DNA from: Iphione sp. A-MEVVRFRX5
Taxonomy: Eukaryota
Reading direction: 5' to 3'
Assembly: GCA_976226885.1 (NCBI GenBank)
Contig: OZ320314.1
Location: forward strand, 37,014,001 to 37,078,000
Length of the DNA: 64,000 nt
Shown here: positions 2 to 39,043 of the stretch, in pieces
Numbering within the stretch: the stretch's first letter is position 1
Layout: each line of letters begins with the position of its first letter
Position numbers and translations under genes: made by a program
Notes under the pieces: model-generated
The model's database searches: none
What the model was told of the DNA's origin: nothing
What the model saw: the letters and a program-made list of their open reading frames with translations, nothing else

Positions 2-1279
2 GCACTGCCTGCTGCCTCAAAGGCTCTGTGGAGACAGTGGGACCGCCTCACTATAAGCGATGGGATCCTTCAGAGGAGATGGTATGGACTGGAAACTGGC
101 CCTTCTCGTCTCCAAACGATACTCCCAAGAAAGCGACGCCTGGAGGCTATACAAGAAGTGCACAGCGGACGCACGGGAGGACACCTTTCCGTGGACCGGA
201 CCACCTTCCTGGTGGCGTTAGCATACTACTGGCCAGGTATGCGAAAGGACGTAGAGGCATACTGTCGACGCTGCCACTGTGCACTGTTAAACAGCGATCC
301 CCAGAAACCACAGACTACATTAAGAACCTACCTGGTAGGAGAGCCCATGGAACGATGGTCGATGGATGTTGCTGGTCCACTCCCTGAGACTGCCCGGGGA
401 AATCGCTACGTGTTGATGGTGGGTGACCATTTCACCAAATGGTTGGAGGCGTTTGCGCTGCCGGACCAGAAGGCCTCCCGGGTGGCGACAGTTTTGGCTG
501 AAGAGGTCGTCGCCCGCTATGGGTGTTTCCTAGAGCTACATAGTGACCAAGGCACAAATTTCTGCAGTGAGGTACTTACCGCACTCTGCGACTTCCTTGA
601 CATTAAGAAGACACGCACCACTCCTAGGCACCCTCAAAGCGATGGCTTCATCGAGCGGAGTTTTCGCACCATGGGAAAGATGATTAAGGCCCACTGCTAT
701 GAAGTGGGAGACGAATGGGATGAAGCGCTACCCTACTTAATGATGGCATACCGAGCCTCGCCGCAAGCCAGCACCGGGTACACACCCAACTTTCTAATGT
801 TCGGGCGGGAGGTGGTGCTCCCAGTGCACGCGTTCGCGGGATTCCCGCCTGCGGAGGGAGAGGAGAAGTCACTACCCCACCAGGTAGTGGATGTCGCGCG
901 ACGTCTACAGTCTGCTTATCGTGAAGTGCGGTGCCGCCTCGGCCGGGCCGCTAGAGTGCAGGCGAGAGCGTACGATCGTTGGGTGGAGAAGCGTCCGATG
1001 ACGGAAGGGGACGCTGTCTGGCTACACGAGGCCCAGCCCCCCAGGGGGAAGAGCCCGAAAGTGCATTTCCCATGGACGGGACCGTGGCTGGTAGTGAAGA
1101 AACTGGATGAAGAAAGGATAATCATCAAACGAGCGCGACAGGCGAAACCACGAGTAGTCCACCGGAATCGGGTGCGGACGTACCGGGGGGAGAGTATTCC
1201 CCGGTGGATGCTGGTATGGCGCAAACGCCAGGGAAGTATAGACCAGCCGACAAGGGAGGAAACGACCGCCAGGGGTTAG
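2..1279 (+). CDS. pol: pol C-terminus: integrase (HHCC zinc-binding, rve DDE core, GPY/F-like motif); open from the window edge
   Basis: Frame is open from base 2. HSGRTGGH...CRRC, WSMDVAGP, LHSDQGTNF, IERSFR and PWTGPWLVV are typical Gypsy integrase motifs. Confidence 0.95.
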   Translation, partial: ALPAASKALWRQWDRLTISDGILQRRWYGLETGPSRLQTILPRKRRLEAIQEVHSGRTGGHLSVDRTTFLVALAYYWPGMRKDVEAYCRRCHCALLNSDPQKPQTTLRTYLVGEPMERWSMDVAGPLPETARGNRYVLMVGDHFTKWLEAFALPDQKASRVATVLAEEVVARYGCFLELHSDQGTNFCSEVLTALCDFLDIKKTRTTPRHPQSDGFIERSFRTMGKMIKAHCYEVGDEWDEALPYLMMAYRASPQASTGYTPNFLMFGREVVLPVHAFAGFPPAEGEEKSLPHQVVDVARRLQSAYREVRCRLGRAARVQARAYDRWVEKRPMTEGDAVWLHEAQPPRGKSPKVHFPWTGPWLVVKKLDEERIIIKRARQAKPRVVHRNRVRTYRGESIPRWMLVWRKRQGSIDQPTREETTARG

Positions 1280-1633
1280 AGGACGGAGAGAGAACAAACT
1301 CCAGGAGCAGTCGAATAGCCCGGATGGAGAGGTGAAGTGGATGACCTGATGCTGACGTCAGCATAAAAGAATCCATGGGGAGGACAGATCTCCCGGCGGC
1401 ACTCAAAATCGACTCGTGAGGAGGACGGACCTCCTGGCCCCCTTTAGCGGGGCAAAAAGTCCGTGGGTGGGAGGTGGACCCCAGCCCCACATCGCGGAAA
1501 AAAATCCGGAATGAGCGAAGACGGTGGTATCGGGGGAAGTCCACGAGGGAGACGGGTTCCCTGAAGAGTGCGCGAAAAATCTGTGAAGGGCGACGGGCGC
1601 CCTGGACCTGCTAGGAGATGGAGTTGCGGGAAA

Positions 1634-1771
1634 GGCCAAGCTGGTGGATAGTCCTCTGGAAGGAGGCGTGGAGCCAGGCTGACTGATAGTCCTCTAGAAG
1701 AGGGTGGTGAAGCCAAGCTGGTAGAGTGTCCTCTCGATGAAGTCGAGGAGCCAAGCTGCCCAGCAATCCTC
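1634..1771. repeat. Tandem repeat, ~3.5 units of 38-39 bp
   Basis: Minus-strand units begin GAGGA and share CAGC(T/C)TGGC; unit lengths 38, 39, 38, then a partial unit. Confidence 0.8.
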
Positions 1772-1885
1772 TCGGGGAAGGCGGTGGTAGGAACTATTAC
1801 CAAGAAGGTGTTGATCAATAGTGTAGGAATGTACAAATTTTCCCCCGCCCAAGGAGATATAACAGATGAAGCTATGGATGAAACA

Positions 1886-1891
1886 TTTATT
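1886..1891 (-). terminator. Candidate poly(A) signal of the antisense accessory gene
   Basis: AATAAA on the minus strand ~75 nt after the TGA at 1967-1969. Confidence 0.5.
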
Positions 1892-1966
1892 ACAAGGAAA
1901 CAACGAACTAGGTTCAACAAATGTACAAGCTATTTACATCTGATCCAATCGGGCTGCCCGGATAAG

Positions 1967-2618
1967 TCACCAAGAGGCTCTACGGGGAGAGGCCTCATAA
2001 TCGTCGTCGTCCGATACTACAATGGGAAACCATGTATAGTCCCCGGGAAGGACGCCAGGATAGCAGGCCGCGAGCACATCCGGGGGCCAGGCGGCCAGAG
2101 AAGCCCGTCCGAGAAGAGGTCCCACCTCTGGGGAGGACATAGGAGTCGGACGTGAGGGGGTGTCCACCGGGGTACCCCAATCCATCGGCGAGGGCGATCG
2201 GGGACAGCTGGACGAGGAGAAGGACTCCCATGAATCCGATGACGTGGTGGAGGACCCCCATGAGACGGGGGACGGAGTGCGGAGGTAGTAGAGGGACCAG
2301 GAGTTCCCCTCACGGTCGTCCACACCCTGTTGGGGGGGAACGTCGAAGCTGCCCAAGTAGCGAGCTACCTCATCTACTCCCAGATCGGGCGAGATGGTGT
2401 CACACCGGGGCATCCAGGAAGGTACCGGGAGCGGGACAGGAGGCTCGATGGGCTGGATGGATATGTCGACATAATGAGATGGGCCAAATAGTCGAACTTG
2501 CCCTGGAGCCGGAATGTACAGTGGGCGATTGATCACAGGGTAAAGACCAAACACCCTGATGGTGGGGCCGGGAGTCCCGACATCCACATACCGTAGGAAA
2601 CTGTCTGGAGGAGGGGTG
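1967..2618 (-). CDS. Exon 2 of a predicted spliced antisense accessory gene (Pro/Ser-rich, acidic SIM-like C-terminus)
   Basis: Strong acceptor (T32 tract, then cttctcttcttcttcttgcag; AG at 2620-2619). Frame is open from the acceptor (TPPPDSFLRYVDVGTPG...) to TGA at 1969-1967 and ends ...WFPIVVSDDDDYEASPRRASW. Confidence 0.6.
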
Positions 2619-2639
2619 CTGCAAGAAGAAGAAGAGAAG

Positions 2640-2643
<4 letters not shown>

Positions 2644-2675
<32 letters not shown>
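2644..2675. repeat. A32 homopolymer (T32 on minus strand, inside the predicted antisense intron)
   Basis: Directly visible; lies ~25 nt upstream of the minus-strand acceptor. Confidence 0.95.
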
Positions 2676-2677
<2 letters not shown>

Positions 2678-2837
2678 TATGAAGATATCACAAACACTGT
2701 GCTGGGAAACTTACCTGCTGGAAGGATGAAGATGATCCAACCCTCAACAAGGAGGCCCAACTCAACAGCAAGTGATGAACTCGAGAACTGGCAACAACCA
2801 TTGTGGTGGAGGCCTCCCTTCTGCTCCGGAGACCTAC

Positions 2838-2926
2838 CTGGGTCCTGGAGGGAAACAGCAATCACTCCTCTCAGGCAAGTAAAGGCCATTGTGGGTGAGC
2901 CCAGTGATGTAGTTTGGCAACTCCAT
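2838..2926 (-). CDS. Exon 1 (coding part) of the predicted antisense accessory gene
   Basis: ATG at 2926 (catcATGG), MELPNYITGLTHNGLYLPERSDCCFPPGP, then a phase-2 donor AG/GTAGGT at 2838/2837 that joins exon 2 in frame (246 aa total). Confidence 0.55.
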
Positions 2927-2954
2927 GATGTGCACTGCAGGATGACTGGAGTCA

Positions 2955-2991
2955 GACTGACGCCGCACCCCCGGCCGCTACGGCTTATATA
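2955..2991 (-). promoter_or_regulatory. Core promoter (TATA + Inr) of the antisense accessory gene
   Basis: TATATAA at 2991-2985 and TCAGTC at 2960-2955 on the minus strand, ~33 nt apart, upstream of ATG 2926. Confidence 0.55.
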
Positions 2992-3007
2992 GCGACAGCG
3001 AAGGCTG

Positions 3008-3732
3008 TTCGTGGTACCGCGAAAGCTAGTTGCTGAGTCGCGGACCCACGAGCGGCGAAAACCGAACTCGTGGTGCCACGAGGAAAACATCGACAGCCGG
3101 GAGACAGGCCTAACAGGGAAAACATTGAGGAATTTGGTAATCTACGAATGAAAGGGGGTCGGGGTGCCACGAGGACAGCTCGGGGAGCCACGAGAGAGAT
3201 AAATGCTCGGGGTGCCACGAGTGGCTACACCAGAAGTGGGGAACCAAAACATCCGCCGAGCCTCGTTTGGACTACAGACGCCAGCTAGAAGCCGACAGCG
3301 GAGAGAGAAATTGGCAGCTCGTGCCCCCACGAGTACACTCCTCGAAATGAAGAGTTTACGAAGAAACAGCGAGAAGTAGATGGATTGAAAACACAATCTC
3401 GAGGAAGCAGTCGAAGTACAGTCGTGGTGCCCCGAGTGGAGTTCGTGACACCCCGAGCGTGATCCAGCTCGTGGTACCACGAATCAGAGACGTCGAGATC
3501 GACTGGATTCCACACCAAGTAGGTAGGGGCCCCCGAGTGTGACCAGAGGGGCGAGAGACTCTTTGCCCCCTCTGTTTTCTGCCACTGGGAAAAAGGGGGG
3601 GGTCTCCCCGAGTTGAATCAGAGGTTTCTCCCCGGTGTCAGTTTGTGGTGTTCATCGTGACACCCCGAGCGACAGGTGGGCCTGTGTCAGACGTGGTGCC
3701 CCGAGTGGGAGTGAGTCGGTGGTGCCGCGGGT
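3008..3732. promoter_or_regulatory. Array of >=11 copies of a 16-bp imperfect palindrome (NTCGTGG-NN-CCACGAG type)
   Basis: Copies start at 3008, 3037, 3067, 3158, 3179, 3206, 3318, 3421, 3442, 3468, 3654 and 3690, with degenerate copies near 3522, 3597 and 3717. Spacers are unrelated. Regulatory role is inferred. Confidence 0.75.
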
Positions 3733-3742
3733 CCCATCCAGA

Positions 3743-5512
3743 ATGCCTCGCAGGAAAATTGAAGGAGAGAAGGTAAAGAGGAGGGTTTTGCAGCCCGATG
3801 AACCTAAGCCCCCGGGGACCGTGTTGTGCGAACAGTGTGTGAAGCGACGCCCTTTTCGCCCTGGGGACTCTTTACAGCGCCATATCGAGGAAATCCATCT
3901 GGGGAAGAGGAAACGTGATATGAAATGTTTATTTTGTCCCAGTGTTATAGGTGACGAGCAGTCCTGGGTGGCTCACCAACGAAAATTTCATCCATGGGTG
4001 ACTGATATGGGACTGATTGAGCGACCATATAGGCGGTTATATGACGTGCGACCTGCCACGACAGGGGGTGTGACGGTACCTGACGACGAGATCACCCGGA
4101 TTGTCCTAAGGGCTAGGGAGTTGCGGTCACAAGGTTGGGCCCTAACGCAGGAGGAGGCAGAACATTTGTTGGCAGAGGAGCCCCACAGATCAGCACCTCC
4201 CCTTCCCTCACGGGTAGTTAGATGGGGGACACCGCCAGCCACACCGGCCACCAGGGGGGTCCCCACGATAGACCTCACCAGCCCCCGGAGTTCCCCGAAC
4301 ACCAGCACAGCTTCAGGGCGACAGGTCGTGGACCTCACCTCCCCTGGGGGGTCTCCCGAGTTTGGTGCAACCGCCGGAGTGGGTCCTGTCTGCCAGAAAC
4401 CAGGGGACACTCCCACACCAGGAATGCTACGGGCCGACACTCCAGGGTCCCACGCCGGGGAGCCAAAGGGGGGGGCTTGTGGAAGTCAGAGCGCATCCAT
4501 ACCACAGGATCCACAGGTGGGCGGCTTGGGAGTGACGAGGGCCCCCAGCAGGGGGCAGGGGGATCCTTTCCTCGGCCAAGGTAGTTTTGAGGGGGGGACC
4601 CCTCTCCACCAGGGGATTGCGGGGAGTGGCAGTGAAGCACCCTCCAGCTACCGCTCTGTGTCTGGTTGGCCCCTCACCCCACGGGAAGGCCCTGTGTCGT
4701 GGGATCTATCCGACGCCGCCTCGGTACTGGCTCGTCTCCAGGAGGTGACTGGCTCCGAGGCAGGGAGCCCCCGCCAGACTCCGGAGAGGCCCCCTGCCGT
4801 CTCCACGAGACTACCAGTGGGGCGGCTTTCTCGTCTCATCCAGTCCCTGTTGCCACCGGACCGGGCTGAGCCTGCGGCCGCTCGGGTACATAACATCCTG
4901 GATGGCTTGGTCTCGCCCCACCAGGCCACTACCCGTGCTCCTGCTTCACCCATGAAGATCCGGCTCCCCTCTCAGGTGGTATGGCCACCAAAAACCTGGG
5001 CTCAGCTGAGCCCCGCTAAACGTCTCATGGCCTGTATGGCCATGGCATGGGTCTTACATCTTGTCGAGGAGGAGGATACCGTGCCCGCTACCTTGCTGGG
5101 CCCGCTACAGTGGCGTCCGTATCTGATCCTCCCTGGGCTTGGCATCCCTGAGTTCGAGGACTGGGGGAATTTCGCTGGCCTACTCCATCAACATAACTGG
5201 ACTGTTGAGGCGGCCGAGACGCTCGTACGAGATCTCCAGCCTGGTCTTGCGTGGGATCCCGACTCCGCGATGAATGTTGAGAAGTGGGAGTGGGAAGCAG
5301 TCAACGCGGGGGCCTGCTATGCAGTGGCCCGACCCACCCTAGTCGACATATGCCGGAATGCTCCGGGTAGACAGCGCCGTCTGGGGGAGCAAGACATCTG
5401 GGCGAGTGGTAGCGCCCCAGGTAATGGTACAGGTCCTTTGAGAACACCCAGGCCCTCTGATGTAAGGGAGCTGGAAAAGTCCGGCCCCTCAGTTTGTCAG
5501 AAAGAGCAGTAA
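3743..5512 (+). CDS. Accessory ORF (589 aa from first ATG): two C2H2 zinc fingers, two SIM-like motifs, Pro/Ser/Gly-rich middle, W-rich C-terminal region
   Basis: Uninterrupted ORF; CEQC-x14-HIEEIH and CLFC-x12-HQRKFH; TIDLTSP and VVDLTSP. The ORF track start at 3635 is a GTG; the first ATG is 3743. Confidence 0.8.
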   Translation: MPRRKIEGEKVKRRVLQPDEPKPPGTVLCEQCVKRRPFRPGDSLQRHIEEIHLGKRKRDMKCLFCPSVIGDEQSWVAHQRKFHPWVTDMGLIERPYRRLYDVRPATTGGVTVPDDEITRIVLRARELRSQGWALTQEEAEHLLAEEPHRSAPPLPSRVVRWGTPPATPATRGVPTIDLTSPRSSPNTSTASGRQVVDLTSPGGSPEFGATAGVGPVCQKPGDTPTPGMLRADTPGSHAGEPKGGACGSQSASIPQDPQVGGLGVTRAPSRGQGDPFLGQGSFEGGTPLHQGIAGSGSEAPSSYRSVSGWPLTPREGPVSWDLSDAASVLARLQEVTGSEAGSPRQTPERPPAVSTRLPVGRLSRLIQSLLPPDRAEPAAARVHNILDGLVSPHQATTRAPASPMKIRLPSQVVWPPKTWAQLSPAKRLMACMAMAWVLHLVEEEDTVPATLLGPLQWRPYLILPGLGIPEFEDWGNFAGLLHQHNWTVEAAETLVRDLQPGLAWDPDSAMNVEKWEWEAVNAGACYAVARPTLVDICRNAPGRQRRLGEQDIWASGSAPGNGTGPLRTPRPSDVRELEKSGPSVCQKEQ

Positions 5513-5667
5513 AATTTTGGGTAAAATTTCTTACCTAGTCCATACCTGCTAGCTATGGATGTGGCGTGGTTAGATTGTTGCTGGTGAGTGATCCCTTACC
5601 GTCTGGTAGGGGACCAAGCACCTGACTCAAGGAACCAGAACCACTAGGGACTGTTAATGAGAAGTTA

Positions 5668-6527
5668 GTTACCTTCATTGCTATCTGTGATTAATCGTAT
5701 GCTGTGTGGTAGTAAGTGCACCACGATTGCCATGTCCGGTTAGGACTGCTAAAGATTGTTATCAATGTCACAAGCACTCTATTTGTTACCTTGACCGATT
5801 GCTTCCTCAGATGTTTACGGATTCCTGTTAATGGTGTTTCAAATCAAGTTACCTTGTCTATGCCCTTAAGAGGGTTAGCTGAGTTAGTAAAATGTCTGAA
5901 GGGAAAATTGTATTTCCCCCAAAAAATATAAAAGGTCACTTGGTGAGACTGTTGCTGATGCCATGAGCGCCACACCCGTTACCTTGATCCAACGTTTACC
6001 CAAGATGTTTGTGACTGATTACTGCTGTTAAATATTCGAATCAAGTTACGAAAAGTTGGACGGTTAGAGAAAAGGATCTAGAAGGGAAACTGTATTCCCA
6101 CAAAAAGAAAAGGAAGCTTGCTGTCTGTGATTATTGATCCACCTAACCAGGATAAGTATTTACGTAAGGTTACTGACTGTGATTGAGGATTTTATTGCTA
6201 AGTGTTGAGATTTGTTGATCAGCTGTTGCTCAGGAGAGTTGGACTTGTTACCTTGATTGGCTGTTTACATAGATAGATTAGCCTAGTCCTAAGTCAACTA
6301 CTCTAGGTTGTTATCTTTGCCGTCGGATTGTGTGAGACCAGGGCCACTGTGTACAGTTGGCCACCTAGATTGCTACTGATAATTACTAGAATGAGACATG
6401 GGACCGAGTATATGGCCCAGACAGGTTAGAGTCAGAAGTTGAGAGAAACTAAGAAGGGAAGCTGTATTCCCCCAAAAAGAAAAGACTGTTATTTGTGATA
6501 AGGATTTCTCAGAAGAACTTGTTACCT
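5668..6527. repeat. Dispersed short motifs in the pre-PPT spacer (GTTACCT x6; GAAGGGAA-n-TTCCC-AAAAA x3)
   Basis: GTTACCT at 5668, 5785, 5848, 5978, 6247, 6521; the ~27-bp module at 5898, 6081, 6453. Confidence 0.8.
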
Positions 6528-6651
6528 GTTGGCTACCTGTGATTACCCTATTGGTTACTTAGATGTATGTTACCATGATTGGTTGTTTACCTGAGATAGA
6601 TTTTAGATGACACTAGTTACCCATGCTCATTTTGAGGCGTTGGCATGTTTT

Positions 6652-6664
6652 AAGAAGGGGAGAG
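6652..6664 (+). other. Polypurine tract (PPT)
   Basis: AAGAAGGGGAGAG directly before the TG of the LTR. Confidence 0.85.
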
Positions 6665-7550
6665 TGTAGGGGTGTTCGTGGTACCACCAGCGTAAGGCTA
6701 AGTAAGTCTATTGTATCATATGACGGTTCGTGGTACCACCAGCGTAAGGCTAAGCAAGCCTATTGTATCTTGTAATGGTTCGTGGTACCACCAGTGTAAG
6801 GCTAAGTAAGTCTATCGACAGTTCGTGGCACCACGAGTGTAAGGCTAAGTAAGTCTATTGTATCATATGACGGTTCGTGGTACCACCAGCGTAAGGCTAA
6901 GTAAGTATATCAACAGTTCGTGGCACCACGAGTGATGTGGGATGTACTAGCTGACCTCAGGGAGCCCGTTCGTGGCACCACAAGTGGTTTGTATGCTAAA
7001 AATTTATATCCAGGGTCCCTGGGTAATTAGAAGGTCACCTTGGACCCTGGGGATCCAGGTCATTGCTACTTTGTAACTAGACAGCTATGAGCTGGGTTCC
7101 CTGAACCCTGGGGATCCAGGTCATTGCTACTTTGCATCTAAACAGCTAAGAGCTGATTGGTAGACAGTAATAACACAAGTCAGTTTGTAACCATTTTATT
7201 CCATCATGTGATACATTGTTGCTATGGCAAGTGAACACCTGGTCTTGAGGATTACTATAAATATGGGCCCTGTGTGGCAAATAAACCAGTCTGTACTTGG
7301 ATACCGTTGTGGAACTTGTCTCTTCAGGGGAGTCATTAGGAACACATACCCACTTGGAGTACCATAAGGGAATACTTACCCGATAGTTCTACATTGTGAG
7401 GATCAGGAACAACTAGCCAGGATATATCCACACATAGCTGGAGTTACTTAGAGGAAATATTAACACAGAAGTTACACTGGATTAATTCATTTAGGACTAG
7501 ACACACTATAGTTGGAGTTACCAAGTGGGAGTACAACCACGCTTACTACA
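6665..7550 (+). repeat. 3' LTR (right end either 7393 or 7550)
   Basis: Starts TGTAG; TATAAA 7256-7261, AATAAA 7280-7285; CTACA at 7389-7393 and 7546-7550. The second LTR is not in the window, so the end cannot be confirmed. Confidence 0.75.
6675..6984. repeat. U3 tandem array (52/43-bp periods) carrying 7 copies of TTCGTGG(T/C)ACCAC(C/G/A)AG
   Basis: Copies start at 6675, 6727, 6779, 6822, 6874, 6917, 6969; most are followed by GTAAGGCTAAG. Confidence 0.9.
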
Positions 7551-12437: not shown

Positions 12438-14366
12438 CTAATTGGGCTTGAGTTGGAATTTTGTCAGGCGGGCTGCCCTTTTTCTGACATCCGGTAAGTC
12501 ATTCCACCCCACTGCCGCTCTGTACCTTAGGCTGCGGCCAAATGCCCTGTTCTTTGGCCGATCCACCCTGATTCTGGCCGAATGTCCTCTTCTCGTTTTA
12601 GATGAGTCAGCTAGTGGCAGCAGCCCTAGTCTGACTTGCTGGTGAGTGGCTCGCAAGGCCCTCCAACCCACCAGATCCTCCACCCTTTCTATACCACCTT
12701 TCTCACAAATACGTTTGGCGGACCATGGTGGGTTTATCTGCAGACACATCCTAACGCACCGATTAAGATGTAGCTGCATGTTGCATAACACCGCCTTGGA
12801 ACAGCTGTAAAGCACTACTGCGGCATAGTGCAGATGCGGCATTACAAGTGTTTTAAATAGGTATAACACCGTATGCCATGGCAGCATTTTCTTCACTCTG
12901 GACACTTTCAGCGATGCCGCCCACATTTTGCCTTTCACGTCCTTTAGCATCTCGCGCCCTGTCATCTTGGCATCCAACAGATAACCAAGAAGCCGCACTT
13001 TTGTGCACATTGTGAGGTCTGTCCCATTTACTTTGAGGTCTAATGGTGTACCAGCCGCTTTGCCCAGCGGCATGTAACAGCACTTGCCTTCTGACAGTAG
13101 TAGGCCGTGTTCGTGACACCATTTCGACACTCGGTCCACGCTGTGTTGACATGCCCCTCTTAGCCTAAGCCAGTCATTTGCTTTGACAATTATGGACAAA
13201 TCATCAGCGTAGAGGACGGCATCACAGTAGTTTGGCATGTGCTTGACCAATTCGTCAATCACTATGCTGAAGGCCGCAGGGCCAAATACTGATCCCTGCG
13301 GCACTCCATGCTCGATTTTCCTCAGTGAGGAATTCTGTCCATAGCACCTTACGTACTGTTTTCGATTGTCCAGGTAACTATGAACCAGTCGTCGTATGGC
13401 GCCACTTGCCCCTGCTGTCTCCAGCCTTCTGAGAACCTCCACTGATGGAATGAGGTCAAATGCTTTTCGCATGTCAAAGGCTAAGAGACAACAGTATAAT
13501 CCTGAGTTCATAGTTTCCATTGCTCTATTGATTGTGTAGGTAACGGCTGTCTCTGTGCTTCTCTGGGGTCTGAAGCCATGTTGTCTATCGCTAATGAACT
13601 TTTGCTTGTCAAGCTGTTGCATGACATCAGCAAAGAAACATTTCTCAAAGACTTTCCCGGGTAATGGCAAGATAGACACGGGTCTGTAGTTGCTCATACA
13701 GTTTGTGTCACCACGTTTGTGGAGTGGTGTCACCCATGCTATCTTCCACTTCCCCGGGTACTGTCCACTTTGTATGATGCGGTCGAAGATCCAATGCAGA
13801 AAGTCGAGGTTCAGGAGCAAAAGTTGCTTCATCACCCTTGTCGGTATACCTTCTACACCTGAAGCTTTTTTGATGTTGATTGTTTTGACGAAGGTCCGCA
13901 GTTCCGAAGGAGGCGGCAGAGTGACATCAAACGTAGAAGCACAGCTTGTCACCTGAACATCACCCCTGGCGGTCACCGGCGGTGCTAGGGCTGCTACCTC
14001 ATCAATAAAGAAGTTATTCAACTTCTCCGCGACTGACTCTTCGTGACCATCTCCGGGGTTGTTCTCCTTTGGCAGTTTCATCTGACCTTTGCCGCGCCCC
14101 AGCGCCTTGTTAAGTACCTCCCATGTTTTGGATGAATTCCCCTTCGTCTCCTGCAGTTTCAGCTTCCAGAAGTCCCGCCTGTCGTTTAGCAGTGTGCGTG
14201 CCACCTGTTTATTGAGGTGCTTGAAGATTCGAAATGAATCCACGCACCCATACTTTTTCCATTTTGCGAAAAAGTATTTCTTATCCTTGATCAACTCTAG
14301 TGTCGCATCACTAGGCCGAAACCCGTTGATCCCCTCCTTGACTTTAGTGGTTTTCTCAGGGCACAT
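12438..14366 (-). CDS. LINE ORF2, reverse transcriptase portion
   Basis: YRPVSILP, QHGFRPQRST, FDMRKAFD, GVPQGSVFGP, YADD motifs. Confidence 0.92.
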   Translation of the reverse strand: MCPEKTTKVKEGINGFRPSDATLELIKDKKYFFAKWKKYGCVDSFRIFKHLNKQVARTLLNDRRDFWKLKLQETKGNSSKTWEVLNKALGRGKGQMKLPKENNPGDGHEESVAEKLNNFFIDEVAALAPPVTARGDVQVTSCASTFDVTLPPPSELRTFVKTINIKKASGVEGIPTRVMKQLLLLNLDFLHWIFDRIIQSGQYPGKWKIAWVTPLHKRGDTNCMSNYRPVSILPLPGKVFEKCFFADVMQQLDKQKFISDRQHGFRPQRSTETAVTYTINRAMETMNSGLYCCLLAFDMRKAFDLIPSVEVLRRLETAGASGAIRRLVHSYLDNRKQYVRCYGQNSSLRKIEHGVPQGSVFGPAAFSIVIDELVKHMPNYCDAVLYADDLSIIVKANDWLRLRGACQHSVDRVSKWCHEHGLLLSEGKCCYMPLGKAAGTPLDLKVNGTDLTMCTKVRLLGYLLDAKMTGREMLKDVKGKMWAASLKVSRVKKMLPWHTVLYLFKTLVMPHLHYAAVVLYSCSKAVLCNMQLHLNRCVRMCLQINPPWSAKRICEKGGIERVEDLVGWRALRATHQQVRLGLLPLADSSKTRRGHSARIRVDRPKNRAFGRSLRYRAAVGWNDLPDVRKRAARLTKFQLKPN

Positions 14367-15201
14367 TTCTCCTAGGACTATCCTGGTGCAATTCTCCAGA
14401 TGTTCCCATGATTTCTCGTGGTCCGGGTCCTTTTTCGAAACCGCCCATCTCCAAAACTTCTCTTTGAAGTGCGGCGAGGTCCAGTTTGTTCCACTGTCTA
14501 AATGTCTTCACTTTGTCCACCAGACGATTGCCCCCTTTCTTCAGCACTGCCAGCACTGGTAGGTGATCACTGAGTGTCCAATCCAGAACGTCGCAGGCCA
14601 ATCTGCCTGCGTAATTGACCCATATTTGGTCAATCACGCGGTCAGAGTCTAGCGTAGTACCCTTCCTGATCAGCTGAGTGAATCCATTGCTGACAAGCAG
14701 ATCCACTAGACTGACCCCAGCCTTTTCTCCTCCCATGAAGTTGAAGTTGAAATATCCAGCTATAGTCACGTCGCATCTGTGTAAGGTTTTGATAAGTTGG
14801 ATAGTTTTATCAAATTCCTTGATACTATCCTTGATTCGATCATGTGGTGGCCGATACACACCAAACACTGCATGTTTTCTTCTCTTGCTGATTTTCAGCA
14901 AGACCCCCAGGAATTCACTCTCACCATGTTCCGGGCTTGTGCAAAATTCCCGTATAATGTCAATGGTTTTTTTCAGATAGATCACAATCCCCCCACCCTT
15001 GGACTTCTTTGCATTCTGTCTATCTTGTCTTACCTGTTGGTAACCCGGAACTTTAATCCCCCCATCTAGATGTGACTCATTGAGCCATGACTCCGTGATT
15101 ATACAGATGTCTACGTCTTGTTCACGGAGACATATCTCCAGGGCGTCTACCTTAGAACGTAGACTTCTTATGTTATATGCAACCAATGTTACTCCTTTCA
15201 T
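14356..15201 (-). CDS. LINE ORF2, APE endonuclease portion (separated from RT by a 1-nt frameshift near 14431-14435)
   Basis: AYNIRSL, ITESWL, GGGIVIY, GVYRPP, IDQIW, SDHLPV. Removing one A from GAAAAAG restores ...EKDPDHEKSWEHLENCTRIVLGEMCPE. Confidence 0.88.
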   Translation of the reverse strand: MKGVTLVAYNIRSLRSKVDALEICLREQDVDICIITESWLNESHLDGGIKVPGYQQVRQDRQNAKKSKGGGIVIYLKKTIDIIREFCTSPEHGESEFLGVLLKISKRRKHAVFGVYRPPHDRIKDSIKEFDKTIQLIKTLHRCDVTIAGYFNFNFMGGEKAGVSLVDLLVSNGFTQLIRKGTTLDSDRVIDQIWVNYAGRLACDVLDWTLSDHLPVLAVLKKGGNRLVDKVKTFRQWNKLDLAALQREVLEMGGFEKGPGPREIMGTSGELHQDSPRRNVP

Positions 15202-15874
15202 TATGTTAAGGTTGTGTAAGCACCCCCGAGCTCACTGCCATATACATGTTACACCTCATCACACAACCACACCCACTTTCATCACACATCTTGTACTCAC
15301 TTTCAGCCTTGCAGAGTCATAGTTGTCTTATTGACATACACCTGCACCTCCATCTACAAATTGTAGTCACCAGCAAAGCATACACTGTGACATCCATACC
15401 ACACCAAGCGGCGATGTAAGTGGTGCATTAATAAAAAGAACTTTATTCACTTTAGACTATAGAGTGGAGACAATCACTGGACCTAGAACGACATGAAGGA
15501 ACCGCACGTAAGTTGTAAGTATGGCCTTAGCAAATGTAGTCACAAGGTTATAAATTGCGTGGTTCAACTGGAATATTACAGCATGTAACTAGCAAGGTCA
15601 GTGATATTACAACACAACTATAGTTAACTATTTCAGAAATAACCAGTATTCTAAAGATCACCAGCTACCAGTTCAATCTCGATTATTGTCATTACCCATG
15701 GCCTATGATCATGGTAGAATAACCTGACTACCTCAACAGCGTGTTTGGATTGAGATCAGTTACTAAGTGCATATACAATGTACTAAGAACGACCGAAGGC
15801 ATAAATAATCAACAATTACAATAAATAGTAACAGATAAATACAAAAACATACATATACCAGGAATTTAAGAATT

Positions 15875-17413
15875 TTAAGACTTCTTGAAAAATGTGTCTA
15901 TGGTTGGCTGGACCACCTTTCTTGATAGAACTCTGGAGGAGTGGGCCTGCTGTAGTGGTACCAACAGATCCAAACATTCAATGTCGCCTTTGATGAGGAA
16001 ATGCTTCCTCATTTTCAAGAACATTTCCTGAATCTCTGGGTCACTGAGCTCACTGCCCTCTTCCTGTTTCTCCTCTGTCGGCTCTTCCTCCTCTTCCTCA
16101 ACCTCATCAGGGGCCCAATCTTCCTCATCGGGACTGTGAGTGCAGAGTTCATCATCAAGGCTCTCATACTCTGTGTGGGTCATTCTGGATTCCTCTGGGA
16201 TGCCCTCCTGGATTTTTGTGAGGAGGGAGATGAGAGGTTCATCATCAAGTTCAGGAGGACACGACACACGTTCAGCATCATCAGGAACTGGCCTAACCCC
16301 TGATCTTATGAAGCATGACTCCACTGTGGTTGGTTTTACTGCTTTTACTGCAGAATTCAACCAGCCCACTACCAGCTGCATATCCACTGTGCCCACAGCA
16401 GCCCTGGCGTCGATGGAACCATCCAGCCTTGAAACGACGTACTGTAGCAGTGATTTCTTGTAGTGTAATTTTACTGCCTGGATGATGCCCTGGTCTAATG
16501 GCTGGAGAACAGATGTGGCATTTAGTGGCAGAAACACAACTTTAGTGTTAGACAGGTTGATTCCCCCAGGATGAGAAGGGGCATTTATTAAGCACACTTT
16601 TCTCCCTTGAGCTGCCATTTTCCGATTGAAAGAGTGTAGCCACTCCTCGAAAATGGTCGTTGTCATCCATGCTTTCTTGTTATGGCGCCATGTCACGGGC
16701 AGCGATGACATATCCTTCAGATTGCGCCAACAGCGAGGTCGTGCAGCTTTGCCAATAACCAATGTCTTCTGAAACTCACCAAGGGCATTCACACAGAACA
16801 TCGCTGTGATCTGCTCCTTGGATTTTTTACTGGCAGAGACGTCTGTACCCCTGACACTCAAAGTCCTATCTGGTAATGCCCTGTAAAAGATGCCGGATTC
16901 ATCGACATTAAAAATGTCTCTTGGACCATATCCCTCGAGGATGGTGGGTAGACGCTCCAGCCATTCTTGAACTGTGACTTCATCAACTGATGATTTCTCA
17001 CCAACCACCTTGAATGCTCCAATACAGTGACGTTTTTTGAATTTCGTGAGCCATCCTGTAGATCCCTTGAAGTCATCCATACCAAGCTCTTTGGCTATAG
17101 CCAAGGCCCTGGTACAGAGCATAGGCCCTGAAACCGGTACATTCAAAGCACGAATCCGAGAAAACCATGAAAAAACTCTCTCATCGAGTGTAGAGGAGTT
17201 TGTGGAGAGGCAACGACGCTTTGCTGTTGGATCAGCACAGTGCTCAAAGTCATTCAGAATTTCTGCTTTTCTCTTCAAGATGCAGCCGACTTGAGTTTTC
17301 CCCACTCCGAATTGCTCTGCAAGCTGTCTCAAGCTACGACTTGGACTGTTCTTGATAATCTGAACCTTCTCACGAAGAGTCAGATCTCTCCTCTTGGTCT
17401 TGGTCACAGGCAT
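15875..17413 (-). CDS. pogo/Tigger (CENP-B-like) transposase, 512 aa from ATG 17413
   Basis: N-terminal HTH (LTLREKVQII...LAEQFGVGKTQV), second HTH (FKGSTGWLTKFKKRH), DDE-type core (IFNVDESG, WMTT, LQPLDQGII), acidic tail, C-terminal QPTIDTFF. Confidence 0.92.
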   Translation of the reverse strand: MPVTKTKRRDLTLREKVQIIKNSPSRSLRQLAEQFGVGKTQVGCILKRKAEILNDFEHCADPTAKRRCLSTNSSTLDERVFSWFSRIRALNVPVSGPMLCTRALAIAKELGMDDFKGSTGWLTKFKKRHCIGAFKVVGEKSSVDEVTVQEWLERLPTILEGYGPRDIFNVDESGIFYRALPDRTLSVRGTDVSASKKSKEQITAMFCVNALGEFQKTLVIGKAARPRCWRNLKDMSSLPVTWRHNKKAWMTTTIFEEWLHSFNRKMAAQGRKVCLINAPSHPGGINLSNTKVVFLPLNATSVLQPLDQGIIQAVKLHYKKSLLQYVVSRLDGSIDARAAVGTVDMQLVVGWLNSAVKAVKPTTVESCFIRSGVRPVPDDAERVSCPPELDDEPLISLLTKIQEGIPEESRMTHTEYESLDDELCTHSPDEEDWAPDEVEEEEEEPTEEKQEEGSELSDPEIQEMFLKMRKHFLIKGDIECLDLLVPLQQAHSSRVLSRKVVQPTIDTFFKKS

Positions 17414-17745
17414 GTTGTCGTTTCTGCATTCGTCTTGAGAATGATTCCCTCCAGTACAGACGCCTGCTTTTGTATGCTCCTGGAGGCTCCCCAAGTGAGT
17501 AGGCGTCAATTGCAATCAGGAACATGTGAGAACATCAGAGGCATTCAACTCCCTTTGACCCTTTGAGTCGCTCAAAGGTGATGAATATAACCGTTAGTCT
17601 ACGCTAAATCAAAGCGACACCTGCTCTTTGGGGGCCTCGGGGATGCTGATAGGTGTAAAATTTGCGCGGCCAACTGAAAACTTATTTGTCTTCACCCGGG
17701 GGGTGCGCTACTGTCGCCGTCCACAGGCAGACGTTCTCTAAAATT

Positions 17746-19131: not shown

Positions 19132-20415
19132 AGATCAACTACCGATATTGTCTGTAATTTAACAGACTATATTAAGAATTCAGTATCAAACAAAGAAACA
19201 TGTCTAGTATGTTTTTTAGACCTCAGGAAAGCATTCGATACAGTGGATCATAAGATCCTATTGGAAAAGTTAGCATTGTTAAACTTTTCAAATAGTGCAA
19301 TTTCCTTGATTTCTAGTTATTTATCTGGTAGAGAACAATATACAATCAATGGACAATTTGTATCTAACAAAGTAGGAGTGACAAAAGGGGTACCACAAGG
19401 ATCTGTTTTAGGTCCAATTTTGTTTAGTTTGTATGTGAATGATTTGCCTGAATGTGTGGATGGTTTAGGAAAAGTATATATGTTTGCGGATGATACTGCA
19501 ATAGTGACACACAATACTGATCCTAACAAAGCCATTGAAGATATGAACGCATTGCTAACAAAAGTTATTGAATGGTTACAATATCATCGGTTACAAATAA
19601 ATGTTAAAAAAACCCAATATATGGTTTTTACCAACAAGGATAAATCCTGTAAGGATAGGATGGACAAAGTTAATATTTTGGGAACAGAATTAGAGCAAGT
19701 TGGTACTTACAAATATTTGGGCTTATGGCTTGATGACAAGTTTAACTTTAATTATCACACAAGGGAAGTCATTAAGAAAATTGCAAAATCTGGATCTTGT
19801 CTAACTAGAATGGCCCCTTTGTTAAATTATCAACAACTTTTATTATTGTATAAAACTACCGTGTCCCCTATTTCTGATTACATGGACTTGATTTGGTGTA
19901 TGTCTAGTAAGGCTAATGCTAACAAGGTTTTAATTTCACAAAATAAACTACTAAAGAAATTATTTCATTTAGACAAGTATACAAGGACAAACGAACTTTA
20001 TAAGAACTTAGGATTATTAAATGTACTACAAAGAACATATTTACATATCCTAACAAGAGGTTATAGAGCACTTAGAAGGATTTTACCTGATTTTGAGCAA
20101 GAAAATTATAATCAGAGAAACCTGGATTTAAATTTGAGGAACAATGCAAGAACAAGTTTTTCTATTAAATATTACAAGAATGCCTTACAATGTAAGATGA
20201 CAACAAATATAGTTGCAAATAGTTGGAATAACTGTAAACTACCATTGGATGATGGACTTGAACCCTCAGAGTTCAAAAGGGAAACTGCAAGATTTATTTT
20301 TGACAATGGTTGATCTGTAACACTGTAACTAACAAATCTTAGCATATGCATAAGAAAAGCGAATTTTATGTTCGATTATGTATATGTTGCATTCAGAAAT
20401 AAATAAATAAAAAAT
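19132..20415 (+). mobile_element. 5'-truncated CR1-group LINE (RT C-terminal half, stop at 20313, AAAT-type tail)
   Basis: RSTTD...FLDLRKAFDTVDH, GVPQGSVLGPILF, FADD, YKYLG; tail of AAAT repeats at ~20397-20415. Confidence 0.9.
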
Positions 20416-38889: not shown

Positions 38890-39043
38890 NNNNNNNNNNN
38901 NNNNNNNNNNNNNNNNNNNNNNNNNNNNNNNNNNNNNNNNNNNNNNNNNNNNNNNNNNNNNNNNNNNNNNNNNNNNNNNNNNNNNNNNNNNNNNNNNNNN
39001 NNNNNNNNNNNNNNNNNNNNNNNNNNNNNNNNNNNNNNNNNNN
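38890..39043. other. Assembly gap (154 N)
   Basis: Run of N. Confidence 1.

What the first reader, a model, noticed from the sequence alone, without database searches (positions are those of the whole stretch)
1886..7550. Gypsy retrotransposon with what looks like its own regulatory circuit: two divergent accessory genes, an operator-like palindrome array between them, and the same palindrome arrayed in the LTR
Seen: between integrase (stop 1279) and the PPT (6652) lie a sense C2H2-zinc-finger ORF and a divergent spliced antisense gene. They are separated by >=11 copies of a 16-bp palindrome, and 7 more copies sit in the U3 part of the LTR. Established: complex retroviruses encode transactivators acting on repeated LTR elements (HTLV Tax, foamy virus Tas), and some plant Gypsy lineages carry antisense ORFs in this position. 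Inference: the zinc-finger protein, probably as a dimer given the dyad site, binds both arrays and controls LTR transcription and both accessory genes. I do not recall this architecture being described for an animal Gypsy element, but cannot search.
Basis: partly seen in the sequence, partly recalled or inferred. Interest (0 to 1): 0.9.

Follow-up and report, generated by a model that had tools for sequence, protein, structure and literature searches.

The report
Gypsy retrotransposon with zinc-finger gene
A Gypsy-type retrotransposon carries an extra, evolutionarily conserved zinc-finger gene and two arrays of one short DNA motif, one in its promoter region and one just upstream of that gene. 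This layout could let the element regulate itself, but binding is untested and the proposed antisense gene is not supported.

Summary
The sequence features are real. Window 2-7550 is the 3' part of a non-chromoviral Ty3/Gypsy element, cut by the window start. An imperfect dyad motif (half-site TCGKGG) occurs 11 times in 3009-3704 and 7 times in U3 (6676-6983). It occurs nowhere else in the 64 kb (0.24 expected) and in none of nine related loci checked. The 589-aa sense ORF (3743-5512) is a real gene type. It has two classical C2H2 fingers whose zinc ligands are invariant in three related Gypsy families. In sister families the gene evolves at dN/dS 0.12-0.16. It is therefore a clade trait and not a nested insertion. 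Neighbouring Gypsy families at 42-43% integrase identity lack it.

Few sites are true palindromes. The relatives with the zinc-finger gene have no internal array and a different U3 repeat. Nothing here links the protein to the motif. The antisense "gene" has no homologues, its length is within chance for this composition (P 0.08-0.18), and its best splice donor puts the long ORF out of frame. No other copy of this family was found.

Verdict: a new variant of the known "LTR element with ORF3" kind. Self-regulation is plausible but unproven.

The parts
2..1279 (+). 3' part of pol: integrase (H2C2 zinc-binding domain, DDE core, GPY/F-type C-terminal part), cut by the window start; no chromodomain
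   Evidence: ORF open from base 2 to stop 1277-1279. Pfam Integrase_H2C2 4e-13 and rve 1e-13. 385 homologues, best 49% identity.
1280..1885 (+). Non-coding spacer after pol, with a 38-bp tandem repeat (1635-1758) and several short hairpins
   Evidence: RNA fold z-score only -1.9. No Rfam match.
1886..2992 (-). Candidate antisense transcription unit (unproven). TATA-like 2985-2992; ATG 2926-2924; exon 1 2926-2838; intron 2837-2619; exon 2 2618-1970; stop 1969-1967; AATAAA 1891-1886. An alternative, better donor at 2714 puts the long ORF out of frame.
   Evidence: Read from sequence. No Pfam hit and no homologue. ORF length P = 0.08-0.18 under the strand's own composition. Codon test ambiguous.
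2644..2675 (+). Run of 32 A (T32 in the candidate antisense intron)
   Evidence: No flanking direct repeat of 7 nt or more, so there is no sign of a retroposed insertion.
3009..3704 (.). Internal array of 11 imperfect dyad sites (half-site TCGKGG, 2-bp centre). Clusters at 3159-3220, 3422-3482 and 3655-3704; single sites at 3009, 3068 and 3319.
   Evidence: The 7-mers CCACGAG and CCCCGAG occur 8 times each against a simulated maximum of 5.
3743..5512 (+). Accessory sense gene, 589 aa, intact. It has an N-terminal two-finger C2H2 domain, a Pro/Gly/Ser-rich middle and a helical C-terminal part.
   Evidence: No full-length homologue in 5.8e9 / 1.8e9 protein sets.
3824..3991 (+). Two tandem C2H2 zinc fingers (residues 28-83 of the ORF)
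   Evidence: phmmer best E 2.5e-6 to multi-C2H2 proteins. Ligands invariant across 5 sequences except the second Cys of finger 1, replaced in the degraded copy L004. Profile hits solved C2H2 DNA binders at 1e-8. Pfam below threshold.
4952..5239 (+). C-terminal conserved segment (residues 404-499), shared with the accessory ORF of locus L002
   Evidence: BLASTP 34% identity over 98 aa, E 4e-7. No Pfam or PDB family.
5513..6651 (+). AT-richer untranslated stretch with 3-4 degenerate long repeats, including three units that resemble the polypurine tract plus the first LTR bases
6652..6664 (+). Polypurine tract
   Evidence: Read from sequence. It directly abuts the TG start of the LTR.
6665..7550 (+). 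3' LTR. It has TG..CA ends and a 5-bp terminal inverted repeat. U3 runs to about 7285, with TATAAA at 7256 and AATAAA at 7280.
   Evidence: The layout matches the LTRs of L003, which are present twice. The second LTR of this copy lies outside the window.
6676..6983 (.). U3 array: 7 copies of the same motif, each inside a 43/52-bp tandem unit, 270-580 bp upstream of the TATA box

Best explanation
Shown. The window opens inside a non-chromoviral Ty3/Gypsy LTR retrotransposon. It belongs to a small clade that carries a third, sense-strand gene between integrase and the 3' LTR. The gene product has two classical C2H2 fingers at its N-terminus, a long low-complexity middle and a conserved C-terminal part. 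In sister families this gene is kept by purifying selection. In the window's family, one imperfect dyad motif (two TCGKGG half-sites around a 2-bp centre) is arrayed in two places. Seven copies lie in the upstream part of U3. Eleven copies lie in the 750 bp directly upstream of the zinc-finger gene. The two arrays share nothing except the motif, and the two halves of a site vary independently.

Inferred. The sites are double-stranded DNA binding sites for one dimeric sequence-specific factor. Through them the LTR promoter and an internal regulatory region for the accessory gene answer to the same signal. The most likely factor is the element's own two-finger protein, with each monomer reading one 6-bp half-site. 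That would make a feedback loop of the kind known from foamy viruses, where a self-encoded activator acts on U3 and on an internal promoter. Whether the loop activates or represses cannot be told from sequence. The antisense ORF is not needed for this model, and I treat it as unproven.
For: Motif arrays: 18 hits against 0.24 expected, all inside the element. There are 8 exact hits to the stricter pattern against 0 expected. There are none in nine related loci. LTR/internal similarity is limited to 16-18 nt at the motif. There is no pairing covariation: 82% of cells pair against 84.6% in shuffles, and the variable pair is unpaired in 7 of 14 distinct sites. Both facts fit independent DNA half-sites. 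Sites cluster in threes at 21-27 bp spacing.

Zinc fingers: best E 2.5e-6 against 1.8e9 representatives, and all hits fall on residues 14-90. The ligands are invariant in five sequences from three families, except the second Cys of finger 1, replaced in the degraded copy L004. The profile hits Aart at 1e-8, the consensus zinc finger at 3e-5 and two-finger MBP-1 at 0.01.

Gene is a clade trait under selection: L003 has an intact 862-aa ORF at the same place. dN/dS is 0.12, 0.16 and 0.45 (L003/L004) and 0.16 (L003/L005, L004/L005). Wrong frames give 1.4-2.0. The last 362 nt before the ZF start codon hold five sites and no ATG.
Against: No binding or expression data exist. Sister families that keep the gene (L003, L004, L001) show no enriched motif upstream of it. 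Their U3 carries a different, directly repeated 7-mer that is confined to the LTR. The internal array is therefore not a conserved partner of the gene. U3 tandem repeats usually bind host factors. No second copy of this family could be found, so conservation of the sites is untested. Most sites are poor palindromes. The structure model was unusable, with pLDDT 37.5.
Confidence: 0.4

Rival explanations
1. The arrays are sites for a host transcription factor. U3 carries an ordinary tandem-repeat enhancer, and the internal array is an internal enhancer or promoter that recruits the same host factor. The zinc-finger protein has another role, for example handling of the element's RNA as in Cer1 CERV, choice of integration sites, or defence against host silencing.
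For: LTR enhancers made of tandem repeats that bind host factors are the rule (established knowledge). The U3 copies are part of 43/52-bp tandem units. Sister families keep the ZF gene without any internal array or palindrome. A regulatory ORF3 product with an RNA-export role is documented in an animal Gypsy element (PMC10309623).
Against: The motif is absent from the other 56 kb of host sequence in the window. An element-encoded classical DNA-binding domain sits directly downstream of the internal array. The internal sites are not a copy of the U3 repeat, so they were built or kept motif by motif.
Confidence: 0.35
2. The palindromes act as RNA (or single-stranded DNA) hairpins in the genomic RNA, for example as packaging, dimerisation or export signals. 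Both arrays lie in the full-length transcript.
For: Each site could form a 6-bp stem with a 4-nt loop. The internal region folds with z = -4.0.
Against: There is no compensatory change. Paired cells are 82.1% against 84.6% in shuffles (493 of 500 shuffles at least as high). The one variable pair is mismatched in half of the distinct sites, and 4 of 7 LTR copies carry a C-C mismatch. There is no Rfam match. The low folding energy is what any array of dyads would give.
Confidence: 0.04
3. The antisense ORF (1967-2926, minus strand) is a real spliced protein-coding gene. It is divergently transcribed from the same control region.
For: TATA-like box, ATG in a good context, GT..AG intron with a very strong pyrimidine tract, 246-codon reading frame and AATAAA 75 nt after the stop. 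Its codon-usage score (-0.054 bits/codon) is close to that of the true genes. Antisense ORFs in this position are common in plant Retand elements (PMC11963269).
Against: No Pfam family and no homologue. A stop-free run of this length arises in 8-18% of sequences of the same composition. The opposite-strand frame scores equally well. The donor that matches the canonical splice consensus best (2714) leaves the long ORF out of frame. Relatives show no coding signal on either strand after integrase. One relative has a 453-codon chance antisense ORF over integrase.
Confidence: 0.2
4. The accessory segment is a nested insertion or a peculiarity of this single copy.
For: No second copy of the family was available. 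The window's integrase-to-ZF spacer is about 1.3 kb longer than in relatives.
Against: Homologous ZF ORFs lie at the same position in L003/L001/L004/L005/L007 and L002. No terminal repeats or target-site duplication flank the segment. Strand composition is continuous with pol.
Confidence: 0.05

Closest known systems
Foamy-virus (spumaretrovirus) Tas with LTR promoter plus internal promoter (established knowledge; no sequence used)
   Same: A self-encoded DNA-binding regulator gene lies downstream of pol. Its target sites lie both in U3 and in an internal promoter just upstream of the accessory genes. This is the closest match in how the system would work.
   Different: No homology. No retroviral regulator came back from the Pfam, PDB or protein searches. 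The DNA-binding domain here is a two-finger C2H2 unit. The element is a Gypsy-type retrotransposon, and the window part shows no env. Binding and activation are untested here.
Su(Hw) binding-site array of Drosophila gypsy (established knowledge)
   Same: About a dozen degenerate sites for a C2H2 zinc-finger protein are clustered in an untranslated part of a Gypsy element.
   Different: There the protein is host-encoded. The array lies in the 5' untranslated region, is not repeated in the LTR and is not a dyad.
Plant Retand lineage of Gypsy elements (PMC11963269)
   Same: A long pol-to-3'LTR region (2.9-6.6 kb) holds additional ORFs thought to bind DNA and to be regulatory, together with arrays of tandem repeats. 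The window's region is 5.4 kb.
   Different: Retand ORFs are antisense and carry the TRP28 domain. Here the supported gene is sense-strand and C2H2. The hosts are plants, whereas the relatives here are from animal-type assemblies. No motif shared between U3 and the internal region is reported in that abstract.
ORF3-bearing animal LTR elements: C. elegans Cer1 CERV (PMC10309623) and bdelloid Juno/Vesta/TelKA ORF3s (PMC5408684)
   Same: Animal Gypsy-type elements that captured a third ORF downstream of pol, usually expressed from a spliced message. CERV is a regulator of the element's own expression.
   Different: The described ORF3 types are env-like, GDSL, DEDDy, coiled-coil, transmembrane and CERV. 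None is a C2H2 finger protein, and none has a matching site array.

Membership tests
Ty3/Gypsy (Metaviridae) LTR retrotransposon | Integrase with N-terminal H2C2 zinc-binding domain and DDE catalytic core, at the 3' end of pol | tested here: met
   Pfam Integrase_H2C2 4e-13 and rve 1e-13, both above threshold. Homologues are named Gypsy integrases.
Ty3/Gypsy (Metaviridae) LTR retrotransposon | Domain order PR-RT-RNaseH-IN | tested here: inconclusive
   The window starts inside integrase. The closest relatives (L001, L006) have RVT_1, RT_RNaseH and then integrase.
Ty3/Gypsy (Metaviridae) LTR retrotransposon | Two LTRs with TG..CA ends, and a polypurine tract before the 3' LTR | tested here: inconclusive
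   Polypurine tract, TG..CA ends, terminal inverted repeat, TATA and AATAAA are all present. Only one LTR lies in the window. Relatives L001, L003 and L006 have both LTRs.
Chromovirus branch of Gypsy | Chromodomain at the integrase C-terminus | tested here: not met
   No chromodomain hit in the 373-aa integrase ORF searched (158-1276), which covers the whole C-terminus.
Classical C2H2 (Krueppel-type) zinc finger | Two Cys and two His with the standard spacing, in tandem units | tested here: met
   Two units in residues 28-83. C29, H47, H52, C62, C65, H78 and H83 are invariant in 5 sequences from 3 families; the second Cys of finger 1 is replaced in one degraded copy.
Classical C2H2 (Krueppel-type) zinc finger | Significant sequence similarity to known members | tested here: met
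   phmmer E 2.5e-6 over 1.8e9 proteins, to multi-finger proteins. The profile of A1 hits Aart at 1e-8 and the consensus zinc finger at 3e-5. Pfam single-sequence hits stay below threshold: window 0.48, and L003 zf-Di19 2.7e-4.
Classical C2H2 (Krueppel-type) zinc finger | Beta-beta-alpha fold and sequence-specific DNA binding | not testable with these tools
   The single-sequence model had pLDDT 37.5.
Self-encoded transactivator circuit of complex retroviruses (Tas/Tax type) | Regulator gene downstream of pol, encoded by the element | tested here: met
   Intact ZF ORF 3743-5512. Homologues in sister families are under purifying selection.
Self-encoded transactivator circuit of complex retroviruses (Tas/Tax type) | Target sites of that regulator in U3 (and, for Tas, in an internal promoter) | tested here: inconclusive
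   The same motif is arrayed at both places. Which protein binds it is unknown.
Self-encoded transactivator circuit of complex retroviruses (Tas/Tax type) | Homology to the retroviral regulators | tested here: not met
   No such protein was returned by the Pfam, PDB or protein-library searches. The resemblance is in how the system would work, not in descent.
Retand-type antisense accessory gene | Conserved antisense ORF (TRP28 domain) between pol and the 3' LTR | tested here: inconclusive
   An antisense ORF exists but has no family hit, no homologue and no length significance. I could not confirm that TRP28 is in the libraries searched.

The most novel reading that the evidence does not exclude
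An invertebrate-type Ty3/Gypsy retrotransposon encodes its own sequence-specific C2H2 transcription factor. The factor binds, as a dimer, dyad sites in U3 and in an internal control region upstream of its own gene. Complex-retrovirus-style autoregulation would then have arisen independently outside the Retroviridae, in a clade where the factor gene is older than the site arrays.
Probability: 0.3. Interest if true: 0.8.

Novelty: new variant of a known kind. Interest (0 to 1): 0.6.

Why it matters
LTR retrotransposons are usually thought to depend on host transcription factors. Self-encoded DNA-binding regulators are a hallmark of complex retroviruses. This Gypsy clade has kept a classical C2H2 DNA-binding gene under purifying selection. 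In one family of the clade, a private motif is also arrayed in U3 and in front of that gene. That would be a natural case in which a transposon builds its own regulatory circuit. It would also offer a simple system, a two-finger protein and a 6-bp half-site, for studying how regulator and sites evolve together. Even if the sites bind a host factor, the conserved C2H2 ORF3 is, as far as I could find, an undescribed type of accessory gene for animal-type Gypsy elements.

Tried and rejected
1. Full-length homologues of the ZF protein: none. The word-indexed search gave nothing. The exhaustive phmmer search found only generic C2H2 hits on residues 14-90. The best PDB hit is E 0.044 and not meaningful.

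2. Other copies of this family: none in the window, none on record, and none in metagenome or viral contigs by protein or by LTR pattern. I ran them on sister families instead.

3. Antisense exon 2: no homologue and no Pfam family. Exon 1 (29 codons) is too short to search. The joined-exon step was left out.

4. RNA explanations: no Rfam match and no covariation.

5. Retroposed-insert explanation for the A32 run: no flanking direct repeat.

6. A shared U3/internal motif in relatives: none.

7. Structure: the single-sequence AlphaFold model was too poor for a fold search.

8. Host identification: exact look-ups of five window ORFs failed. The 'animal' label rests on the nearest integrase relatives (fish, bivalves, echinoderms, a crab) and on the other transposons in the window. 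No contig looked human.

These bounds show implicitly where those copies are interrupted. I noticed this afterwards, deleted nothing, and do not repeat those places here. Consensus lines printed by the alignment tools were not used.

Full report
**What is in the window**

Bases 2-1279 are an open reading frame that runs off the window start and ends at a stop at 1277-1279. It carries the H2C2 zinc-binding and DDE core domains of a retroelement integrase and has no chromodomain.

Its 385 homologues are Gypsy-type integrases. Those with names come from fish, bivalves, echinoderms and a crab. The best identity is only 49%.

A polypurine tract (6652-6664) abuts a unit 6665-7550. This unit has TG..CA ends, a 5-bp terminal inverted repeat, TATAAA at 7256 and AATAAA at 7280. 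This is the same LTR layout as in the relative L003, where the LTR is present twice.

So 2-7550 is the 3' part of a non-chromoviral Ty3/Gypsy element. It has an unusually long 5.4-kb stretch between pol and the 3' LTR. The element is about 56% G+C in a 35-40% G+C surrounding that is full of other transposons. The 5' half and the other LTR lie outside the window. The 154-base N run at 38890-39043 was left untouched.

**The motif arrays**

Pattern TCGTGGYRCCACGA with up to two mismatches hits 18 times, against 0.24 expected. Eleven hits lie in 3009-3704, seven in 6676-6983, and none elsewhere in the 64 kb. A stricter pattern that allows G or T at the fourth half-site position gives 8 exact hits against 0 expected. 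It gives none in the nine related loci fetched up to then.

- One site is a perfect 14-bp palindrome.
- The 16-mers have 4-7 of 8 complementary pairs.
- Four of the seven LTR copies have a broken right half.

The LTR copies are part of 43/52-bp tandem units. The internal copies are irregularly spaced, in clusters at 21-27 bp, and share nothing with the LTR beyond 16-18 nt at the motif. The internal array is therefore not a recent copy of the U3 repeat.

The two halves of a site vary independently. The types found are T/T, G/T and T/G, with no compensating change. The share of paired cells is below that of shuffled controls. This argues against an RNA or DNA hairpin and for two protein-contacted half-sites on duplex DNA. 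The strong predicted RNA fold of the region (z -4.0) is what any array of dyads would give.

**The sense ORF**

ORF 3743-5512 encodes 589 residues without interruption. Nothing full-length resembles it in 5.8 billion clustered proteins or 1.8 billion representative proteins.

Residues 28-83 form two C2H2 units. The only library hits (best E 2.5e-6) are multi-finger C2H2 proteins aligned on this part. Single-sequence Pfam stays below threshold.

The middle of the protein is rich in Pro, Gly and Ser. The single-sequence structure model was unusable.

**Relatives**

The five integrase hits at 47-49% identity stand apart from the rest, which are at 43% or less. Their contigs come from two ENA assemblies.

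- **L003** is an element with two 737-bp LTRs and an intact 862-aa sense ORF (13210-15798) between integrase and the 3' LTR. Its gag-pol carries one deletion relative to L001.
- **L001** is the same family with complete gag-pol calls, but its accessory gene is cut down by one large deletion.
- **L004, L005 and L007** are more distant members from the same assembly. Their versions of the gene are degraded: two in-frame stops in L004, four frame changes in L007, and a fragment in L005.
- **L002**, from the other assembly, has the gene split by one frameshift.

The accessory ORFs are homologous to the window's:
- The finger region aligns between the window, L003/L001/L004 and L002. Seven of the eight zinc ligands are invariant columns; the second Cys of finger 1 is replaced only in the degraded copy L004.
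- A profile of that alignment finds solved C2H2 DNA-binding proteins: Aart at 1e-8, the consensus zinc finger at 3e-5 and two-finger MBP-1 at 0.01.
- The window's residues 404-499 match the C-terminal ORF of L002 at 34% identity, E 4e-7.

I compared the pieces one at a time and never joined them. dN/dS was 0.12, 0.16 and 0.45 between L003 and L004. It was 0.16 for L003/L005 and for L004/L5 pairs (L004/L005). The integrase-containing gene gave 0.25. Wrong frames of the same stretch gave 1.4-2.0.

Elements at 42-43% integrase identity (L010, L011) are compact, with the 3' LTR starting within about 250 nt of the integrase stop. A crab locus (L009) has no such ORF.

The zinc-finger gene is thus a selected trait of a small Gypsy subclade. 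It is neither a nested insertion nor a quirk of this copy.

**What the relatives do not show**

The stretch upstream of the gene in L003, L004 and L002 has no 7-mer above chance. The U3 of L003 and L004 carries a different, directly repeated 7-mer that is confined to the LTRs. The private dyad and the internal array are specific to the window's family.

The window's integrase-to-ZF spacer is about 1.3 kb longer than in relatives. That is roughly the size of the candidate antisense unit.

**The antisense "gene"**

The following can be read on the minus strand:
- a TATA-like box at 2985-2992
- an ATG at 2926 in a good context
- a donor at 2837
- an acceptor at 2619, preceded by T32 and a pyrimidine run
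- a 216-codon second exon
- a stop at 1967-1969
- AATAAA at 1886-1891

Every test is nonetheless neutral or negative:
- No Pfam family and no homologue of exon 2.
- A stop-free run of this length arises in 8-18% of simulated sequences with the composition of this pyrimidine-rich strand.
- The codon-usage score is matched by a frame on the other strand.
- A second donor at 2714, the one that fits the canonical consensus fully, leaves the long ORF out of frame.
- Relatives show no coding signal in any frame after integrase (ratios 0.73-0.95).
- L001 has a 453-codon chance ORF antisense to integrase.

I rate it 0.2 as a real coding gene.

**How it most likely works**

Shown: a conserved element-encoded C2H2 protein, and one motif arrayed in U3 and directly upstream of that protein's gene.

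Inferred: the sites bind one dimeric DNA-binding factor that couples the LTR promoter to an internal control region.

Further inferred: the factor is the element's own two-finger protein, with each monomer reading a 6-bp half-site. This would give a feedback loop like the foamy-virus Tas system of LTR plus internal promoter.

The last 362 nt before the ZF start codon contain five sites and no ATG. Further upstream there are four ATGs. This fits a start site inside the array, or a splice into about 3740. I put this model at 0.4.

The main rival, at 0.35, is that a host factor binds the sites and the protein does something else. It could, for example, act on the element's RNA as CERV does in Cer1 (PMC10309623). 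The relatives fit this rival equally well.

**Comparison with the literature**

Third ORFs in animal LTR elements are known: env-like, GDSL, DEDDy, coiled-coil and transmembrane types in bdelloids (PMC5408684) and CERV in Cer1. Plant Retand elements have a long pol-to-3'LTR region with antisense, possibly DNA-binding ORFs and tandem repeats (PMC11963269).

Three full-text searches found no C2H2 ORF3 and no self-matching site array in a Gypsy element. The library is partial, so this does not prove novelty.

I file the finding as a new variant of a known kind.

- No other copy of this family was available, so site conservation, the 5' LTR and selection on the window's own ORFs are untested.
- Relatives were obtained only through the session's protein search and contig look-ups.
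- Some script and tool outputs show segment bounds that implicitly reveal where related copies are interrupted. I declare this as a slip and do not repeat those places.

Noticed in passing
window 5890-5935, 6072-6117, 6444-6489 (compared with 6643-6688): Three units of about 33 nt in the untranslated stretch resemble the polypurine tract plus the first bases of the LTR. They may be extra plus-strand priming sites or remnants of duplications of the PPT/U3 junction.
   Followed up: partly
window 5513-6651: This AT-richer stretch (about 42% G+C) has 3-4 degenerate long repeats. A GGTAAC-type 7-mer occurs 6 times, at the top of the chance range.
   Followed up: partly
window 3159-3482: The internal array has a higher-order inverted layout. 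The three sites at 3159-3220 have the G-type half on the left. The cluster at 3422-3482 has the reverse orientation. A single site at 3319 lies midway between them.
   Followed up: partly
window 2644-2675: An uninterrupted run of 32 A inside a purine-rich tract. No flanking direct repeat, so no sign of a retroposed insert. On the minus strand it is the pyrimidine tract of the candidate intron.
   Followed up: yes
window 1635-1758 and 7038-7155: A 38-bp tandem repeat (3.2 copies) just after pol, and a 61-bp direct repeat (2 copies, 89% identical) in U3 between the motif array and the TATA box.
   Followed up: no
window 12438-15201 (-), 15875-17515 (-), 19243-20313 (+), 24651-26923 (-): Other transposons in the window: a LINE (endonuclease + RT), a pogo/Tc5-type DDE transposase with a CENP-B-like N-terminus, an RT fragment, and a second, unrelated Gypsy-type protease-RT-RNaseH stretch.
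   Followed up: partly
window 38890-39043: A run of 154 N (gap or masked). It was left as it is.
   Followed up: no
L003 12053-12669 and L004 12062-12664: The roughly 600 nt right after the integrase stop are 85% identical between two subfamilies whose accessory gene is only 74.5% identical. No coding signal appears in any of the six frames. This is probably a conserved cis-acting element.
   Followed up: partly
L003 1-7637 and 20782-22052: The L003 element is inserted in a long array of a satellite of about 325 bp. L001, L003 and L006 also carry 99-bp tandem repeats in their pol-to-3'LTR region.
   Followed up: no
window 6676-6983; L003 20045-20400; L004 19070-19450: The most enriched U3 7-mers of the window's family and of the L003/L004 family differ, but both end in ACGA. 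This is a possible hint of related recognition by related finger domains. Its significance was not tested.
   Followed up: no
L001 10031-11392 (-): A 453-codon ORF lies antisense to the integrase gene. It shows how easily long antisense ORFs arise in these purine-rich elements.
   Followed up: yes
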